A stretch of DNA of 52,519 nucleotides from Perkinsus chesapeaki ATCC PRA-425 (GCA_013115145.1 JAAPAO010000208.1:1-52519), one strand, 5' to 3'. Numbered from the stretch's first letter, positions 20,201 through 27,900 are shown. Translations and numbers: made by a program. The notes: generated by a model from the letters alone, not told the origin.

Positions 20201-20590
20201 ATTGAGTACGATACTGTATTCGGGTCGAAGCAAAGCAGATCCTATTGCCCTTGTCAACATTCTGAGCACCTCAGTTGACAACATAACTAAGTAGGCTGTT
20301 CCGTACTTTGCATAGGTAAATGTACGCGTACACATGGTAACAGTCATTACAGATGTCACCGTGCCTGGAGCATGATACTTGGTCGTATACAAAATAAATT
20401 ATGTGTTCGATGAATCCTCAGCGGGTTCTCGTATGACCCGACCTACCATTCGCTACCAATTCCTACCAACTATTTAACAACCGTAACGTGACGCGGGTGT
20501 CTGTGACGCCAGTGCGCTACAGTAGTGCTGTCTGAACCGGGGGAACTATATCCGTATAGCATCTACGCCATAATAATGGATTCCATGGTA

Positions 20591-20709
20591 GCCCCCTAGC
20601 TGGTGGTTTATGTTCCCAGTCAGCTTGACCGTTGCTATAAACATTGCAGTCTTTTGTAATTTACAGTCTTTACTGGCATCCACGGTCGATCCCCGGCGGG
20701 GGCATTTTT
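20591..20709 (+). pseudogene. Degenerate tRNA-like element (possibly Thr-UGU derived)
   Basis: 5' GCCCCC pairs with 3' GGGGGC, followed by discriminator A and TTTTT. A-box-like TAGCTGGTGG, degenerate T-loop GGTCGATCC and internal TTGTAA. Too long (114 nt) and the boxes are imperfect. Confidence 0.35.
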
Positions 20710-20795
20710 AAAGTAATTTTCGCTGATACCCCGTGAGTATTGGGAGAGCCTGTTAGTTCCATTCACGAATAACATAGTTGTGTTGCATTCTTGCA

Positions 20796-23700
20796 ATGCC
20801 TGTTAATCCAACATCTGGAGCCCTAATAACTGGCGAGATAGCCGCACCGGAGAACCAGAAGGTACTTTAACGTATAATTATCTTCCTGCACCTGTCGGCA
20901 AGGCCCTAGAAGTTGGTACAGTTAACCAGCAGCCGTCGAAAGGGGCAGTAGAATCTCCGATCGTTTGTCTTGAAGTGCTCGAAAATGAGGTATCAAAACT
21001 GTTATTGCGAGGAGTAATGAGACTTGGGGTTAGCTTACGAGAGTTCTGCACAATCGAGGAGATCCCTGCCGTCTCGACAAAGCGAAGAAAGTATTGGAGA
21101 GATATAAGGGAAATGACTGGGTAATCGGCAGTAGTACTTGGGGGAAACAGCAGCTTCAGTGTGCGGCAGATCATACATCAGTCATGTCCCAGTCAACAAG
21201 GTTTCCATGTCTGTGGGTATTCTAGGGTTAAAGTCAGACACAGGACGGACCTATTTCAGTTACTGGTACTGGTTACGAATAAGTACTACAACCGTGATAG
21301 CTCCTATTCAGGTGCTTACTTGGTCGCCTAGATCAAGGAGCCCGATTCATAATCATCCATGTGAAAGATGCTTTTTAATGCCGTTACAGGTAGATGCATA
21401 TCTAGCAGCAGTACAGTAGCAGCAGGGGTGCTTCCAGGGTGATTTGCACGAAGAGCGGTATGAAGTACAAGAGGAGCAGAAGCCAGGAATGAACCATAAG
21501 CTTGTCTCAAGGACTGCGATACCTATAAGGTAGTAGCCTTCGTTCACTTGTAATCAGTTATTAGCGTACGGTGTAGAACCGCCGCGTGGATCGACAACAG
21601 CATGGGCTGGCACGCCATTGAAAACTCTGGTGATGGCCTGGGCGTGTCCCTGCATTGTTATGTAATAGCATTACCGTCGGTCGATGTTAGCGAATATCAG
21701 ATCCCTGCGTACAGTCAATGTAAGATTATTGACACTGTGTCGAAGGAGATACGCAGTGTGGCGTGTCTGCCGAAGGATGTCTGTGCTCAGCCACTGCATG
21801 AAGCCATTATGGAGAGGACTAGGAAGTAATGTCTTTATGACGGTGAGTAGAGTTGGATATAGGATAGCGGTATAGGTATATTGCAGCACAGGAGGACTGC
21901 TGCTCTGACGATAATCCACCCATCCCTGTCGTCTCGGTAGGTGTGTGACTCTACATTCCTGAGGGTAATGTCAGGCTCGAGCCAGACAGGACATTGAGTC
22001 CGCCTTTGCCTCGGCATCGTGCCCATTAGCTTTTGATAAGGAAAGCTTGCCTTTGGATGACGACTGTCTTAAAAGAGCAGTCGACTTCACATGCGACCTC
22101 TCCGTATGGACCCTTCCCGTCCAAGCTGCTGTCTATCAGTTCGCAGGTGAACACAGGGCACCTATTCTTCTTTAACCAGCTCTTTGCCCGAGCTGATCCT
22201 CTAGCTGTTGCAGCTGAAGGGCTCACAGCTGCGCTAAACGTTAATATGTAGGAGATTGCATAATATTGTTAAGAAGATTGCCTCTAGGTACACCTTCGAG
22301 ATGGCGCCAGTGATGTTGCTCATGGAACGTAAGCTACTTCAGCACATGGCCTCCTTCCTAGGGTGGTACGAGCATAAATCTGGACTCAGTCGTATGCCAA
22401 GTCCGACACTCGAAGGTATAGATCTTGGCATGGTGGCGTGGTGGTGGGATGTGTTCTTAGGCAGCGAAGGCTTTGAACTGACGAGGCTCACGTCTGGCCT
22501 GAGCGACAAAGCTAAAGAGCTGGTAGTGCTGGCGGACATCTGGGGAAAGGGGGTTGGACTGGTCCTTGCCAGTTTGACGGTATGCTCCTACCTGGTGCCT
22601 CGCACTGCAACATAACAGCCCTGCATGTCGCTAGGCAAGAGCTGTTCCCGGATAGTGTGGAGGAGGGGGTCCTCGGGGTTGAAGGTGAGGGATGTGGGGA
22701 TAATAGGTTAATATAGACTTTAGGTTCTTTACATGGCCGACTGATGGTATTTACTTCAGCAGATTCGCACTGTTCAATGGAGAGGGGATGCATGATGCTT
22801 GGTAGTGCCTCATGGGGCAAGCTCGGCCGGGTGTACACTGGGGCACGTTTTTGAATGAATTGAAAATATTTCAAAGGCAATTCCGTCTGTCAGGGAAATG
22901 CTAGAGCCGGGGTATTCGATGGCGTTCCTTTCCTCTTATTAACTCTTTGAAGATGATAATGACAATCGACAGATACTGAGCGGCCGTGTTGAGCGCTGGA
23001 AACGGGTGTTTTTAGCTTATGCCACATCGATGAATTGTTCGGTGCTGCTCAGGATTGGGTAGAAAAAGCTTGGTGTATGTGAAGACGGATCCAGAGACCT
23101 GTCAAATGATACCAGAGGAGCTTGATAAGGCTATTAACTTCGAGGTAGTCATGTGCCTCTGTGATGGAGCTTCGCTCCGCTGTGAATGTTCTTAGATTCA
23201 AAAAGGGAATACACCCTTCTTTATCAACGCCACCGCGGGCACAACAGTCGCTGGTGCCTTTGACGATTGTGATGCAATAGCAGCCGTGGCCGAAAAGTAC
23301 GGTTCGATTTGAGCGCCGGAGATAGTTGCTCAGGTATAACTGCTGGTTACATGTAGATGGGGCTTTGGGGGCATCATTCCTACTGGCCAAAGGTGAAGAG
23401 CCATATGATAGTCTCACACGTAGGGGTTGGATGGGAAGGGTGTTGGGCTATTCATAGGATTTAGGTGGAATGGAGAAAGCTGATTCTATCTCGTGGAATC
23501 TACATAAGTTGCTGGGAGTGCCGCTCCAGTGTAGCGCACTGCTGTGTAGACATCCTGGCGCTTTAAGACAGGCTCATGAGGAACGTCATGGAACTGAGGT
23601 TAGGAGGCGGAGCGAAGCGATTATTTAATACCGTTTTTGTTTTCAATTTCTTCAGGCGTTCCCTTGCTTGAGCCCATTGGACACCGTGTATGACTCGTCA

Positions 23701-24673
23701 ATGTCGGGCCGCAAGGCAGATGCTTTTAAGGCTTGGATATTGTGGAAGAAGATGGGTGACTGCGGCATGGCTAACAGAGTTAGATTGGTGTAGGCGCTTT
23801 AGTGATCTCCAGCTTCATACCGCTCTTTCCTATAATCATTAGATATACACACACTCAAGAGTTCGCTGAAATGCTCAAGAGCTTCCCGGTTCGTAAGCAG
23901 TTCGATGAAGCTCAACAGCTGTACGAGGAGCCGCTGGTTGAGAAGGTGGTATAAAAGAATACACCACACTGGGAGTACTGCTGTCACGCCTCAGGGTCCC
24001 TGTGATGTTGAGGGAGCCAATGACAATGCCTTCCATCTGGCCTTCGAGCCTACTTCAGCATGTAAGTTGTGCAAAAGTTGGTATGGATTCATAGCTATCG
24101 GCAGGCACATGTTTCTGGTGGGTGCCTTATGACCTTCGTGAGAGGTTCTCCAAAGAGGGCCCCAGTGCTCTTTCTAAGGAGCTTTTTGTTGTTGCCTCTC
24201 GTATGCGTTGCGCCCTACTATCGGAAGGTAACATGGTTCTATACTATGTATTACTCTGTATTAGGATCTTTGATGATATCGTTCTACTCTACCGCGGAGA
24301 AGCCGGCATTTTGGCGCATTCCCAACATTAACCCAGAAATTTCTCATGAGCACATGTGGGCCATTTTGAAGATCGTCAACAGGTTAGACTTGCCCCCTCC
24401 CCCAGCGTAGCAGTTTCGTAACTCAGAGTTGGCAACTTCTGCTTCCCACCGGGCACTAGGGAGTGGGAGAAGGGCATGCGCAAACGTGGAGACTGCTCAA
24501 TGGTATCGTAGTGCTTCGCTCCGCTGTAGATTATTTTTTAGCCGTCCCGTTTGTCATCTCCGGCATTCGTGCCCGGGAACTGGTCGATTCCTCCTGAGTT
24601 TGATGAGCTTAAAAAGAGTCGATCGGCAGTTCAACTGTTGGGAGGAATTGAGGGCACCGGCGAGTTCATCTAA
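20796..24673 (+). CDS. Bifunctional cysteine dioxygenase - cysteine sulfinate/glutamate decarboxylase (CDO-CSAD/GAD) fusion
   Basis: CDO motifs [29 protein letters not shown] and VSLHCY, spliced in phase to group II PLP decarboxylase motifs [48 protein letters not shown] and SWNLHK (PLP Lys codon 23506-23508). Confidence 0.88.
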
Positions 24674-24938
24674 GGCGCCCTGCAGCAGCAGCCGCCGCCG
24701 TAATAATTATCATTTACTTTGGATCTTTTAATATTCGAAGCTACTTCGTCTTCTTATACTACATGTTCATTGCTAACCAATGGTGATACTGCTGCTGCTG
24801 CTGTGAAAGCAGTGATAGCGATGCCCCAGGCATCAGCAGATATATAATCTCATTGATCTTACCTCCACTTTGGCTTTGTGTTTCCCTGTCCATTACCTTG
24901 ATTCTGTAACAGTTGTATTTTTATTTTCCTATTTCACT

Positions 24939-27900
24939 ATGAGCGTGATTGATATTACTATAAAGAAGGTAGATGGCACTACTGTGGAAGTGTCGATCGA
25001 TAACACAGCTACAGTCACTGATCTTAAAAAGGTACTAGATGCCAGTTGGATCTTCGGATTTGACCCCAATCACCGGCGCTACATTCGCTTACAGTAATTC
25101 CCAGCTTCTGTAAGTGCAATTGAAACGTTCCTTCGTTTTCGTAGCTCGTGCGCCAAACACGCTCATTGGGGCTCGATTTGGCGTCACATCCGGGATCGGG
25201 TTACGGTGTAGGCTGATGAGAGATGTGGTAGAATATTAATGCACAGTGGAATAGGTCGCTGAATGTTGGTATATCAATATACTGCACACTTGGATGATCA
25301 TAGCCCTTATCATACCATGCTAGTAAAAAAACAACCGTAAGCTCTTTTGTAGAGCACAGAAGCAACAACAACAATCACTGAAGCTTTTTGTTAAGAGTAA
25401 CTATCCCACTGTCGAGATGGTGGCAACAACGTATGTTATTGATCATAGTGTGGCTAGGAAGGAAGACGTTAACATTAGAATTTCCTGTGATTACTCGACG
25501 TGCTGGAGTGTTATGGCATTTTAGTTGGTCCAGGAGAGGACTGAAATACCCAAAGAATCACAGCGGCTCATATTCCGGGGTCAAATACTATCTGATGAGA
25601 CGACCCTCAAGGATTCAGGTTGGCCCAGGTCAGCAGGGTGGCGCTGGTATAGGACAGGTGATTAGGTCTGAATGAAGATGGTCTAACTGTTCACCTAGTT
25701 CGACATCTAGTGCCTCCTCCGCACCCCAAGGCACCAGCGGCGACAGGCCAACAGCAAACACCGACTTTAAGACTTGGTAGGTATCTCTGGCAGTAAAGTT
25801 GGAATTCATTTTGGGAAAATAATGTGTCTTACTCAAGCAGCAAAATCTATCTCAAGGGTCTTCCTACGCCCTCCTAGTAGTAAAAGTTGACGCTGTTACT
25901 TCTGGTCGGGAACGCCTTGGGCTAGCTGGTTCGAAAAATGGTTGGAGTTTTGGTATGCTTTCTGAGTGACTTGTACACACAGACAATAAATATCACAAGA
26001 CTGGATGAAACGGTTAATCGATATGTCCTGATTCATTTATTTATAAGGTCTTGGCGTGCAGTATTGGCTCTATCGAGGAAGTATCCCGCTCGGAATAGGA
26101 TAACCTTGCAGGTGCAACGCCTGGATCAGCTCCTACCGCAGCAGCGGGCCAGAATCCTTACATGGCGCCTTCGGGCCTCGGCATGGGCCCCATGGGGGGC
26201 ATGAGCCCGGAAGCGATATCGGAGATGATGAATAACCCTGTAGTGGATAGTATGCTGTCCAATCCTCAGATCATGAGATGTAAGCGGGAGGGTATCGTGG
26301 GAATCTCCTTCTTGCTGACTTATTCGTTTTTGTCAGCTCTGATCGAGATGAACCCGCAGATGCAGCAGTTAATGCAGCAGAATCCCGAGCTGAGGACTCT
26401 TATAGAAGACCCAGAAGTAAAGATATTCTCTAGGTTGATTGAGTGTCATCAGTATTTTCATTAGTTTTTACGACAAACGATGCAAGCTGCCCGCAACCCT
26501 AGTATGATGCAAGAGATGATGCGGACCAATGACAGGCAGATGGCGAATCTGGACAGCATCCCCGGTATTACAGGGAGACCACCTTCAGAGAGGAGCAGCC
26601 TAATTTTTCATTTGTTCACCGGAAATATGGTTCCTATTTTATCCACACTTGTCCACTTTTGAATAGCTCCGTAAGATTAGTCACCGTAGTAGCTGTGCCT
26701 AGTAGGTCCAGTAGTCTGTCTTGGGTTAAGCGTCCTCACTTCTCGGGTCAGGTGGATACCAAGCTCTTCAAAGGATGTACCGAGATATCCAGGAGCCAAT
26801 GTGGAATGCAGCATCAGGGGGTAGTAGTGGATGATGATGGTATTATCCTATATAGGAGTATCGCTCTTCAGCGCATGCCCACAGTGGTAGCTCCTCAGCA
26901 TCACAATTGATGGAGGCTATGCAGCAAGACAGGGAAGCAGGGCCTAACAATAGGCCATTGGGCAATCCTTGGGGATCATCATCTGCGGCCCCTGCGGCTA
27001 GTGGCTCTGGTAATAGAGGAGTTGTATGCATTTTACGGTCCGGAGTTTGGCAGGATAGCAGCGATTCCGTGCAGTATGGGATTAGTGTTGCATCATCCAT
27101 CTTTTCATTTAGTGGATCAGGCTAGGGAGTCACTGTGGTGTTCTTTTATCCCCGAGAAACAGACTCGTGGATAGTATTTATTTAATGACCAGTGTGCTCG
27201 TCCATTCCCTTTCATTTGATGGCCAGTGTGGTCATGTACTCGTTCATTTTCCTTGGTTTCTAGGTACCCAACAGCAGTCCTCAACAGCACCCCGTACCAC
27301 CACTCAGCCTACAGCACCTATGGTTAACCCCTTCGCCTCGATGTTTGGTATGCCTCCTCCTCCAGCACCACCGGCCACTAGCAGCAGCGGTGGAGCATCT
27401 GGCCAACAGCAGCAGCAAGGCAGCACTGCACCCAATCCAGCAGTTAATACCTTCCCGTTCATGGCCTTCCCCACCCCTCCTCAGCCATCACAGCCGGCTT
27501 CTTCTGGTAGGTCTTTAGGCTTGCTTGCTCTTCAGCAGCATTGATTGCAGTGTGATAGTCCATCGGTCTGCATGAGAGTTGTTGTATGTAAACCTTTGGA
27601 TCAGCGGCGCTAAGCTGAGCCGCTCAAGGCAGTTCACTTATATGACATTTTTAGTCTATGTTAAAATAGAGAATAAGACAGCGCATAGTACAGCGTTAGC
27701 TACTAACTTCAACGAGCAATTGTATTCCGAGGAGCCGGCACTACTACCTTGATGACGTAAATGCTGTTGTCCGCATTATTCCCAGGTGCATCCTCCACCA
27801 CCACCACGACAGCAGCTGGCAGCAGTGCTGGGGCGTCTCAAGAAAATCACCACAGGAATCCCTTCGCCGAATGGTTATCGAACCCAGCAGTGCAGAATAT

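What the first reader, a model, noticed from the sequence alone, without database searches (positions are those of the whole stretch)
20796..24673. Natural cysteine dioxygenase-decarboxylase fusion: a one-gene hypotaurine/taurine pathway
Seen: exons 21312-21389, 21438-21529, 21577-21661, 21701-21825, 21876-21936, 21975-22103 and 22147-22247 join in phase through GT-AG introns of 38-50 nt. They give ...[10 protein letters not shown]...GWHAIEN...[14 protein letters not shown]...ERTRKYIAAQ...[14 protein letters not shown]... with no stop. Established: mammalian CDO uses R60, H86/H88/H140 (iron), C93-Y157 (crosslink) and S153/H155. Equivalents of all are present (YSR, HNH, RCF, GWH, SLHCY). CDO makes cysteine sulfinate and CSAD decarboxylates it to hypotaurine; in animals these are separate genes. 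Inference: one polypeptide performs both steps, possibly channelling the intermediate, to supply an osmolyte/antioxidant. That could matter for a marine parasite facing salinity swings and host oxidative burst. The ORF track hides the CDO half entirely. Whether this fusion is already described needs a database check.
Basis: partly seen in the sequence, partly recalled or inferred. Interest (0 to 1): 0.93.

Follow-up and report, generated by a model that had tools for sequence, protein, structure and literature searches.

The report
Natural cysteine dioxygenase–decarboxylase fusion gene
This Perkinsus chesapeaki gene really does join a cysteine dioxygenase to a CSAD/GAD-type decarboxylase in one protein, a fusion shared with Vitrella and Colpodella, present in databases but apparently unstudied, and its decarboxylase half lacks a normally essential catalytic tyrosine.

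Summary
Window 20796-24673 (+) is one 26-exon gene of Perkinsus chesapeaki encoding about 850 aa. They are supported by spliced RNA contigs, by a three-species exon/intron conservation pattern, and by orthologues.

The N-terminal domain matches Pfam CDO_I and mammalian CDO1. It keeps Y58, R60, H86, H88, C93, H140, S153, H155 and Y157. The C-terminal domain is a group II PLP decarboxylase whose model is closest in fold to CSAD.

The fusion is not new to databases. GenBank KAF4667591.1 / UniProt A0A7J6M958 already carries both domains, though that model is mis-spliced at two places. The same fusion occurs in P. olseni, P. marinus, Vitrella, Colpodella and about a dozen environmental eukaryotes, once as an uninterrupted genomic ORF. 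I found no paper describing it.

The whole fusion clade lacks the catalytic-loop tyrosine motif (YLFQ, Tyr335 of CSAD) that protonates the decarboxylated intermediate. Cysteine to cysteine sulfinate is therefore well supported, but hypotaurine as the end product is only the most likely guess. Channelling is untested. The fusion is also not parasite-specific.

The parts
20796..24673 (+). Whole gene (CDS span): 26 exons, 25 GT-AG introns, 850 aa, CDO-decarboxylase fusion
   Evidence: model; RNA; agrees with public protein P0001 except at two places; three-species exon/intron contrast
20796..20861 (+). Exon 1 (start codon ATG at 20796)
   Evidence: Same N-terminus MPVN...APENQK as P0001 and the P. 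olseni/P. marinus orthologues. Intron 1 (20862-20902) is the least supported intron: it rests on frame and annotation only, with no RNA
20903..20989 (+). Exon 2
   Evidence: Donor side confirmed by an X1 RNA joint at 20989|21034
21034..21120 (+). Exon 3 (CDO N-terminal helices)
   Evidence: X1 RNA joints on both sides; 75% identity, no gaps against both sister species
21170..21265 (+). Exon 4 (GYSR: Tyr58/Arg60 equivalents, codons 21218-21226)
   Evidence: RNA joints in X1, X5 and X8; 87% identity, no gaps; residue mapping
21312..21389 (+). Exon 5 ([10 protein letters not shown]: His86, His88, Cys93 equivalents, codons 21348-21371)
   Evidence: 90% identity to P. olseni
21438..21529 (+). Exon 6
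   Evidence: X1 joint 21389|21438. The relatives' contig has 185 letters where exons 6-7 plus the start of exon 8 predict 185
21577..21661 (+). Exon 7 (GWHAIEN His140; VSLHCY Ser153/His155/Tyr157 equivalents, codons 21611-21661)
21662..21700 (+). Intron 7 (39 nt, in frame, no stop). The public model KAF4667591.1 wrongly keeps it as 13 coding residues directly after the Tyr157 equivalent
   Evidence: Absent from the P. olseni, Vitrella and all other orthologues; segment length in the relatives' RNA contig; 34-36% identity with 11-14 gap columns
21701..21825 (+). Exon 8 (Pro159 and Cys164 equivalents; end of CDO domain)
21826..21875 (+). Intron 8 (50 nt, holds TAA at 21827-21829), between the CDO and decarboxylase halves
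   Evidence: Spliced out exactly at 21825|21876 in the relatives' RNA contigs X5 and X8
21876..21936 (+). Exon 9 (linker / start of decarboxylase N-terminal arm)
   Evidence: 82% identity, no gaps
21975..22103 (+). Exon 10
   Evidence: The relatives' contig has 131 letters where this exon predicts them. No gaps
22147..22247 (+). Exon 11 (FFFNQLF: equivalent of CSAD Phe94, codon 22183-22185)
22288..22415 (+). Exon 12
   Evidence: Joint 22247|22288 in X5 and X8
22461..22522 (+). Exon 13
   Evidence: Frame and orthologue alignment; no gaps
22573..22684 (+). Exon 14 ([10 protein letters not shown]...)
22724..22801 (+). Exon 15 (FTSADSHCS: His191 equivalent, codon 22768-22770). The public model KAF4667591.1 skips it
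   Evidence: Present in all orthologues; the relatives' RNA is laid on 22741-22803; 76% / 68% identity, no gaps
22802..23052 (+). Intron 15 (251 nt; all other introns are 37-57 nt)
   Evidence: The loose end of the relative's RNA at 22803 continues with the next exon's sequence. No Rfam match
23053..23144 (+). Exon 16
23196..23296 (+). Exon 17 ([14 protein letters not shown])
   Evidence: Pfam Pyridoxal_deC hit on the exon alone, 1.3e-7
23334..23419 (+). Exon 18 ([11 protein letters not shown])
   Evidence: The relatives' RNA joins ...CTCACAC to 23465
23465..23598 (+). Exon 19 (SWNLHK: PLP-binding Lys305 equivalent, codon 23506-23508; start of the atypical catalytic loop)
   Evidence: Pfam hit 9.4e-7
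23656..23789 (+). Exon 20 (rest of the catalytic loop, no YLFQ motif; [11 protein letters not shown])
23843..23945 (+). Exon 21
   Evidence: 178 letters in the relatives' contig match exon ends 23789, 23945 and 24061
23995..24061 (+). Exon 22
24105..24227 (+). Exon 23 ([10 protein letters not shown])
24265..24382 (+). Exon 24 (AFWRIPN: Arg466 equivalent, codon 24315-24317)
24427..24502 (+). Exon 25 (clade-specific CFPPGT motif)
   Evidence: The relatives' loose end at 24382 continues with this exon's sequence
24542..24673 (+). Exon 26 (C-terminal tail and TAA stop)
   Evidence: identical to P0001; similar to P. olseni
20969..21754 (+). Genomic span of the cysteine dioxygenase (CDO_I, cupin) domain, about aa 45-215
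   Evidence: Pfam CDO_I on P0001 at 2e-10, 40.9 bits against a cutoff of 23. PDB CDO1 at E 1e-15 on the P. olseni orthologue. Coordinates
21925..24382 (+). Genomic span of the group II PLP decarboxylase domain, about aa 256-782
   Evidence: Pfam Pyridoxal_deC 8e-45. PDB GAD65/GADL1/CSAD at E 1e-68 to 1e-70. Foldseek top hits are CSAD, TM 0.93

Best explanation
One gene encodes one polypeptide of about 850 aa with two enzymes in series. The N-terminal cupin domain is an Fe(II) cysteine dioxygenase. It should oxidise L-cysteine to cysteine sulfinate (inferred from a complete, invariant catalytic residue set). The C-terminal domain is a PLP-dependent decarboxylase of the acidic-amino-acid group (CSAD/GADL1/GAD). 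It most plausibly takes that cysteine sulfinate and removes its alpha-carboxyl to give hypotaurine. This step is inferred from the fusion logic, the hydrophobic Phe/Leu at the Phe94 position, and the retained Lys305, His191 and Arg466 equivalents. The fusion arose once and is inherited across myzozoan alveolates (Perkinsus, Vitrella, Colpodella and uncultured relatives), so it is a lineage trait and not a parasite adaptation. Shown here: the single spliced ORF, both domain memberships, residue conservation and phylogenetic spread. Inferred: both activities, the substrate of the second domain and the end product. The end product is uncertain because the usual proton-donating loop tyrosine is absent.
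For: Gene structure. Public protein P0001 from this very contig carries Pfam CDO_I (40.9 bits, cutoff 23) and Pyridoxal_deC (153.6 bits). About 17 further protein clusters carry both domains, including Vitrella CEM18328.1 and Colpodella angusta EP00388_P005069. P0012 is a single uninterrupted 2244-nt ORF on a 20.5 kb genomic contig with eukaryotic neighbours. The CDO residues Y58, R60, H86, H88, C93, H140, S153, H155, Y157, P159 and C164 align to rat CDO. All but the C164 equivalent are kept in every full-length member; the C164 alignment shifts by one residue in the environmental clade. The decarboxylase domain hits GAD65/GADL1/CSAD at E about 1e-68 to 1e-70. AlphaFold model of the P. olseni orthologue: pLDDT 80, pTM 0.73. 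Best structural matches are human and mouse CSAD, TM 0.93, rmsd 2.4 A. The Phe94 position is F or L and never the Ser of true GADs. Phe94 blocks glutamate and favours cysteine sulfinate in CSAD (bioRxiv 10.1101/2020.09.25.308866). The fusion decarboxylase domains form one clade with full support inside the CSAD/GAD group. The CDO-core exons are the most conserved in the gene (87-90% nt identity to P. olseni), so the CDO half is under constraint.
Against: No enzyme assay or metabolite data exist. Own-species RNA covers only 20951-21461; the cross-domain RNA evidence comes from relatives about 83% identical. All clade members lack the catalytic-loop motif A-x-YLFQ-x-DK-x-YD/DTGD that every reference CSAD/GADL1/GAD keeps. 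That tyrosine is proposed to protonate the quinonoid intermediate in CSAD and is described as essential in the family (bioRxiv 10.1101/404970). Other active-site-lining motifs are also changed (SHYS to SHCS/SHNS/GHES, NPHK to NLHK, PGGS to PGAS), and the clade sits on a long stem (1.08 substitutions per site). These changes fit a modified reaction.
Confidence: 0.6

Rival explanations
1. The fusion is real and the CDO half makes cysteine sulfinate, but the PLP half is not a plain CSAD. Having lost the loop tyrosine, it carries out an altered reaction after decarboxylation. One option is oxygen-dependent oxidative deamination to an aldehyde (sulfinoacetaldehyde, possibly feeding sulfoacetaldehyde/isethionate-type metabolism or releasing sulfite). 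Another is decarboxylation-dependent transamination. A third is use of a new proton donor from elsewhere in the fused protein.
For: The YLFQ tyrosine motif is absent in all roughly 18 clade members, including sequences from intronless ORFs and transcriptomes, so this is not a splicing artefact. [quoted passage not shown] Perkinsus has ...EAF... and Vitrella ...NLF... where the references have YLF. The clade has a long stem branch and several other substitutions lining the active site.
Against: The loop is flexible and hard to align, and an unrecognised donor (water, Lys, or another Tyr such as the Perkinsus DTVY) could complete normal decarboxylation. As far as I know, no sulfinoacetaldehyde pathway has been described. 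His191, Lys305 and Arg466 are kept as in normal decarboxylases.
Confidence: 0.25
2. The decarboxylase half acts on a different acidic amino acid (aspartate to beta-alanine, or glutamate to GABA), and the CDO domain works independently or as a regulator. On this reading the fusion does not form a taurine pathway.
For: Sequence scores to GAD65, GADL1 and CSAD are nearly equal. NCBI names the protein 'Glutamate decarboxylase 2'. CSAD and GADL1 also accept aspartate.
Against: No clade member has the Ser that GAD has at the Phe94 position (the role of Phe94 is). A fusion of two enzymes that is kept across a wide lineage usually links consecutive steps, and the CDO product is exactly the preferred CSAD substrate. 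The best structural matches are CSAD.
Confidence: 0.08
3. One of the two domains is catalytically dead and survives only as a structural or regulatory module.
For: The missing catalytic tyrosine could mean a disabled decarboxylase.
Against: The PLP-binding Lys, His191, the HVD Asp and Arg466 are kept across the clade, as is the whole CDO residue set. Both halves show exon-level conservation.
Confidence: 0.05
4. These are two neighbouring genes joined by a wrong gene model; there is no fusion protein.
For: Own-species RNA does not span the junction. Intron 8 holds a stop codon if it is retained.
Against: Single RNA contigs from relatives cross the junction with the introns removed. An uninterrupted ORF encodes both domains in L001. 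About 18 orthologues share the same architecture. The linker exons are gap-free and 72-82% identical between species, while the flanking introns are not.
Confidence: 0.02

Closest known systems
Mammalian cysteine dioxygenase type 1 (CDO1; e.g. rat, PDB 2b5h)
   Same: Pfam CDO_I cupin. The 3-His iron site (H86, H88, H140), the Cys93-Tyr157 crosslink pair, Arg60 and Tyr58 for substrate binding, Ser153-His155-Tyr157, Pro159 and Cys164 all align.
   Different: It is not a free-standing 200-aa enzyme; it is the N-terminal domain of an 850-aa protein. The match is remote (E about 1e-15). A disordered N-terminal extension of about 45 aa precedes it.
Cysteine sulfinic acid decarboxylase (CSAD; PDB 2jis, 6zek) and its paralogues GADL1, GAD65 and GAD67
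   Same: Same fold (TM 0.93 to CSAD). About 28-30% identity. PLP lysine, His191 and Arg466 are kept. Phe is at the CSAD Phe94 position in Perkinsus.
   Different: The catalytic-loop Tyr335 motif (YLFQ..DK.YD..DTGD) is missing. SHYS becomes SHCS, NPHK becomes NLHK and PGGS becomes PGAS. There is an N-terminal CDO fusion and a C-terminal tail of about 70 aa with a clade-specific CFP(P) motif. The clade is separate and sits on a long stem.
Separate CDO and CSAD genes of animals, and neighbouring CDO/CSAD genes reported in some bacteria (the bacterial case is recalled from memory, Agnello et al. 2013, and was not checked here)
   Same: The same two consecutive steps of the cysteine sulfinate route to hypotaurine/taurine.
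   Different: Here both activities are encoded in one polypeptide. No paper describing such a natural fusion was found in the searchable library.
Plant and insect aromatic acetaldehyde synthases (e.g. PDB 6eei, 6eeq, 6jrl)
   Same: Group II PLP decarboxylase fold in which loss of the loop tyrosine (Tyr to Phe) changes the outcome from amine to aldehyde. They appear among the structural and sequence matches.
   Different: They act on aromatic substrates and share only 16-18% identity. In the Perkinsus clade the whole loop motif is replaced rather than changed by one substitution.

Membership tests
Cysteine dioxygenase type I (Pfam PF05995, EC 1.13.11.20) | Profile match above the curated threshold | tested here: met
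   P0001 (this gene's public protein) scores 40.9 bits against a cutoff of 23, E 2e-10. Vitrella-type P0007 scores 62 bits. PDB CDO1 at E 1e-15.
Cysteine dioxygenase type I (Pfam PF05995, EC 1.13.11.20) | Three-histidine iron site (His86, His88, His140) | tested here: met
   Aligned to rat CDO. Window codons 21348-21356 and 21611-21613. Invariant in all full-length members.
Cysteine dioxygenase type I (Pfam PF05995, EC 1.13.11.20) | Residues of the Cys93-Tyr157 thioether crosslink (eukaryotic type) and the Ser153-His155-Tyr157 network | tested here: met
   RCF and SLHCY align to C93 and to S153/H155/Y157 and are invariant. Formation of the crosslink itself cannot be tested with these tools.
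Cysteine dioxygenase type I (Pfam PF05995, EC 1.13.11.20) | Arg60 (with Tyr58) binding the substrate carboxylate, which separates cysteine dioxygenases from 3-mercaptopropionate dioxygenases | tested here: met
   GY(S/Q/T)R aligns to Y58-x-R60 and is invariant. The Gln-for-Arg rule in 3-mercaptopropionate dioxygenases is from my own knowledge.
Cysteine dioxygenase type I (Pfam PF05995, EC 1.13.11.20) | Cysteine-dependent O2 consumption and cysteine sulfinate formation | not testable with these tools
   Needs an enzyme assay.
Group II PLP-dependent decarboxylase (Pfam PF00282), acidic amino acid subgroup CSAD/GADL1/GAD | Profile and fold match | tested here: met
   Pyridoxal_deC 153.6 bits. PDB GAD65/GADL1/CSAD at E 1e-68 to 1e-70. 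Foldseek CSAD TM 0.93. Nested in the CSAD/GAD group in the tree.
Group II PLP-dependent decarboxylase (Pfam PF00282), acidic amino acid subgroup CSAD/GADL1/GAD | PLP-binding lysine (Lys305), stacking His191 and Arg466 | tested here: met
   NLHK, SH and WR align with the reference motifs NPHK, SH and FR. Lys is near-invariant, His invariant.
Group II PLP-dependent decarboxylase (Pfam PF00282), acidic amino acid subgroup CSAD/GADL1/GAD | Catalytic-loop tyrosine (Tyr335 of CSAD, in the YLFQ motif) that protonates the quinonoid intermediate | tested here: not met
   All 14 reference sequences keep A-x-YLF. None of the fusion members has the motif, and the loop is variable in length and sequence. 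HMMER places a gap or Glu at the Tyr position.
Cysteine sulfinic acid decarboxylase specifically (EC 4.1.1.29) | Phe94 closing the pocket against glutamate (Ser in GAD, Tyr in GADL1) | tested here: met
   Phe in Perkinsus, Vitrella, P0010 and P0011; Leu in Colpodella and the environmental clade; never Ser or Tyr.
Cysteine sulfinic acid decarboxylase specifically (EC 4.1.1.29) | Orthology with animal CSAD, and cysteine sulfinate to hypotaurine activity | tested here: inconclusive
   The clade is separate from animal CSAD, GADL1 and GAD and does not group specifically with CSAD. Activity cannot be tested here.
Bifunctional fusion enzyme (single polypeptide) | Both domains in one continuous reading frame or transcript | tested here: met
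   Uninterrupted ORF L001:3001-5244. Spliced RNA contigs of relatives cross the junction. Transcriptome-derived Vitrella and Colpodella proteins.

The most novel reading that the evidence does not exclude
The PLP half of this old myzozoan fusion is not a classical CSAD. It has replaced the whole tyrosine-bearing catalytic loop. It may therefore run a changed reaction on cysteine sulfinate, such as oxygen-dependent decarboxylation-deamination to a C2 sulfinate/sulfonate aldehyde. Alternatively it may receive its proton donor from the fused CDO domain or the clade-specific C-terminal tail. Either case would define a new route of organosulfur metabolism in alveolates.
Probability: 0.25. Interest if true: 0.8.

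Novelty: new variant of a known kind. Interest (0 to 1): 0.55.

Why it matters
Taurine and hypotaurine are major osmolytes and antioxidants of marine life, but their synthesis in protists is barely charted. A natural fusion of the first two pathway enzymes, conserved from Perkinsus to chromerids and colpodellids, does three things. It gives a ready marker for this capacity in alveolates. It offers a compact two-step enzyme for biochemical and biotechnological study, including a direct test of substrate channelling. It is also a natural experiment in how a group II decarboxylase works without its canonical catalytic tyrosine. For Perkinsus, a parasite that (from my own knowledge) lives in taurine-rich bivalve tissue, it raises the question of whether the parasite makes its own sulfur osmolyte. 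Finally, the public gene model for P. chesapeaki needs correction at two sites that touch catalytic motifs.

Tried and rejected
1. A shortest-path exon finder that minimised intron number or intron length gave wrong models. I replaced it with manual curation checked against RNA, orthologues and three-species conservation.

2. Pfam scans of single exons found the decarboxylase but not the CDO domain; the pieces were too short.

3. Own-species RNA runs are tiny and cover only 20951-21461. Run X2 laid nothing, so direct P. chesapeaki evidence for the junction could not be obtained.

4. The five middle hits of the representative search (P0002-P0006) were low-complexity or repeat artefacts unrelated to CDO.

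5. The alignment-based word search added only one partial fusion. The decarboxylase-domain query was more productive.

6. An Rfam scan of 20500-25000, including the 251-nt intron, found nothing.

7. Eight literature searches for a described CDO-CSAD fusion, or for cysteine dioxygenase in Perkinsus, chromerids or dinoflagellates, found no relevant paper (and for the TSA accession).

8. The protein-language-model look-up only repeated 'cysteine dioxygenase' at lead-level scores.

9. I could not measure the distance or contacts between the two active sites, because model coordinates are not exposed and the decarboxylase is a dimer. Channelling was therefore not assessed.

10. Earlier notes of this scan held nothing on this gene.


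Full report
**Observation.** They join in a single open frame that yields the quoted peptides. Extending the model in both directions gives a 26-exon gene from the ATG at 20796 to the TAA at 24671-24673, encoding 850 aa. Of its 25 GT-AG introns, 24 are 37-57 nt and one is 251 nt (22802-23052).

**RNA evidence.** RNA contigs from a run labelled with the same species (X1) splice introns 20990-21033, 21121-21169, 21266-21311 and 21390-21437 exactly as modelled. They reach only from 20951 to 21461. Two runs that hold a relative's RNA (about 83% nucleotide identity) each contain a single contig that spans both halves:
- X5 has a 1466-nt contig and X8 a 905-nt contig.
- These run collinearly from the CDO exons, across 21825|21876 and 22247|22288, into the decarboxylase exons.

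**Comparative evidence.** I fetched the P. olseni and P. marinus loci and aligned the three genes.
- Nearly every exon aligns without gaps. Overall exon identity is 74.5% to P. olseni and 66.5% to P. marinus.
- Every intron is about 30% identical and full of indels.
- The CDO-core exons 4 and 5 are the best conserved in the gene (87-90% to P. olseni).

**Identity of the locus.** A search of 1.8 billion representative proteins with the 75-aa ORF at 21602-21826 returned an 837-aa protein that is 100% identical. This is GenBank KAF4667591.1, 'Glutamate decarboxylase 2 [Perkinsus chesapeaki]'. Its UniProt entry is A0A7J6M958, 'cysteine dioxygenase'. It lies on a 52,519-nt contig, which is this window. 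Pfam finds CDO_I (40.9 bits, cutoff 23) and Pyridoxal_deC (153.6 bits) in it. The fused architecture is therefore already in public databases.

The public model differs from mine at two places:
- It keeps the in-frame 39-nt intron 21662-21700 as 13 residues directly after the Tyr157 equivalent.
- It skips exon 22724-22801, which encodes the FTSADSHCS motif holding the His191 equivalent.

**Spread of the fusion.** Searches with the CDO region, with a family alignment and with the decarboxylase region found about 18 protein clusters that carry both domains:
- P. olseni (857 aa).
- P. marinus (766 aa, cut off by the contig end).
- Vitrella brassicaformis (CEM18328.1).
- Colpodella angusta (EukProt EP00388).
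- About a dozen environmental sequences.

One of these, P0012, is a single uninterrupted 2244-nt ORF on a 20.5 kb genomic contig. Its neighbours are eukaryotic genes (cytochrome b5-desaturase, RabGAP-TBC), so the fusion does not depend on any splicing model. Two entries that appeared to lack CDO (P0031, P0033) are merely called from an internal methionine inside the CDO domain.

In a maximum-likelihood tree the fusion decarboxylase domains form one fully supported clade. It sits on a long stem (1.08 substitutions per site) inside the CSAD/GADL1/GAD group. The chromerid and colpodellid sequences branch first, and Perkinsus is sister to the environmental clade. The next best non-fusion proteins fall to 30-34% identity. 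This points to a single origin and vertical inheritance in Myzozoa. It argues against a parasite-specific adaptation.

**The CDO half.** HMMER alignment of the P. olseni orthologue to rat, mouse and human CDO1 (E about 1e-15) places the motifs as follows:
- GYSR on Tyr58/Arg60.
- IHNH on His86/His88.
- RCF on Cys93.
- GWH on His140.
- SLHCY on Ser153/His155/Tyr157.
- Pro159 and Cys164 are also matched.

The same strings occur in the window's protein (window codons). All but the Cys164 equivalent are kept in every full-length member; the Cys164 alignment shifts by one residue in the environmental clade. A cysteine-specific, eukaryote-type CDO is well supported by sequence. Activity remains inferred.

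**The decarboxylase half.** It matches GAD65, GADL1, CSAD and GAD67 almost equally by sequence (E 1e-64 to 1e-70). An AlphaFold model of the P. olseni protein (pLDDT 80, pTM 0.73) is closest to human and mouse CSAD (TM 0.93, rmsd 2.4 A). The PLP lysine (NLHK), His191 (SH) and Arg466 (WR) are kept. [quoted passage not shown] In CSAD, Phe94 blocks glutamate and specifically favours cysteine sulfinate (bioRxiv 10.1101/2020.09.25.308866). With the fusion logic, this makes cysteine sulfinate the most plausible substrate.

All 14 reference CSAD/GADL1/GAD sequences keep the catalytic-loop motif A-x-YLFQ-x-DK-x-YD...DTGD-x-x-x-QCGR. None of the fusion members has it. The loop varies in length and sequence, and no tyrosine is conserved in it. 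This holds for sequences from intronless ORFs and from transcriptomes, so it is not a gene-model artefact.

That tyrosine (Tyr335 in CSAD) is proposed to protonate the quinonoid intermediate. It is described as essential in the family, and a single Tyr-to-Phe change turns plant decarboxylases into acetaldehyde synthases (bioRxiv 10.1101/404970). Other residues lining the active site are also systematically changed: SHYS to SHCS/SHNS/GHES, NPHK to NLHK, PGGS to PGAS. A defining catalytic feature of amine-forming group II decarboxylases is thus tested here and not met. I therefore do not file the domain as a CSAD. I describe it as a CSAD-like decarboxylase whose product is most likely, but not securely, hypotaurine.

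**Mechanism and odds.**
- Most likely (about 0.6): cysteine is oxidised to cysteine sulfinate by the N-terminal domain and decarboxylated to hypotaurine by the C-terminal domain of the same, probably dimeric, polypeptide.
- Main rival (about 0.25): the PLP domain gives a different product, or uses a new proton donor.
- Minor rivals: a different acidic substrate (0.08), a dead domain (0.05), two separate genes (0.02).

Channelling could not be assessed, because model coordinates are not exposed and the active site of these enzymes lies at a dimer interface.

**Novelty.** Eight full-text searches found no paper on a natural CDO-decarboxylase fusion or on cysteine dioxygenase in Perkinsus, chromerids, colpodellids or dinoflagellates. 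The library does not cover most subscription journals. The architecture is visible in automatic annotation, so the bare fact of the fusion is not a discovery. Three things appear to be new:
- Its correct gene structure in this species.
- Its single origin and its spread across Myzozoa.
- The clade-wide loss of the catalytic tyrosine loop.

I rate it a new variant of a known kind, with moderate interest (0.55).

Noticed in passing
window 21662-21700 and 22724-22801: The public gene model for this locus (KAF4667591.1, 837 aa) keeps a 39-nt intron as coding sequence directly after the Tyr157 equivalent. It also skips the 78-nt exon that encodes the His191 motif. Both errors touch catalytic regions.
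   Followed up: yes
window 22802-23052: One intron is 251 nt, while the other 24 are 37-57 nt. Its length is not conserved in P. olseni or P. marinus (77-146 gap columns), and it has no Rfam match.
   Followed up: partly
window 24427-24670 (aa 783-850): After the decarboxylase domain, most fusion proteins share a (C)FP(P) motif directly behind the last helix, CFPPG(T/S) in Perkinsus and Vitrella. A variable tail follows. Free-standing CSAD/GAD proteins end before it. Its function is unknown.
   Followed up: partly
window about 24870-25100 and onward; L005:6789-8445: The downstream neighbour starts with a ubiquitin-like domain. In P. olseni the gene after the fusion is a ubiquilin-type protein (ubiquitin, UBQLN1 and UBA Pfam hits), so gene order is conserved between the two species.
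   Followed up: partly
L001:1-8244 and L002 (environmental contigs): The environmental sister clade of Perkinsus encodes the fusion without introns, on compact contigs up to 68 kb with eukaryotic neighbours (cytochrome b5-fatty acid desaturase, RabGAP-TBC). These are probably uncultured relatives of Perkinsus with intron-poor genomes.
   Followed up: no
I did not examine it.
   Followed up: no
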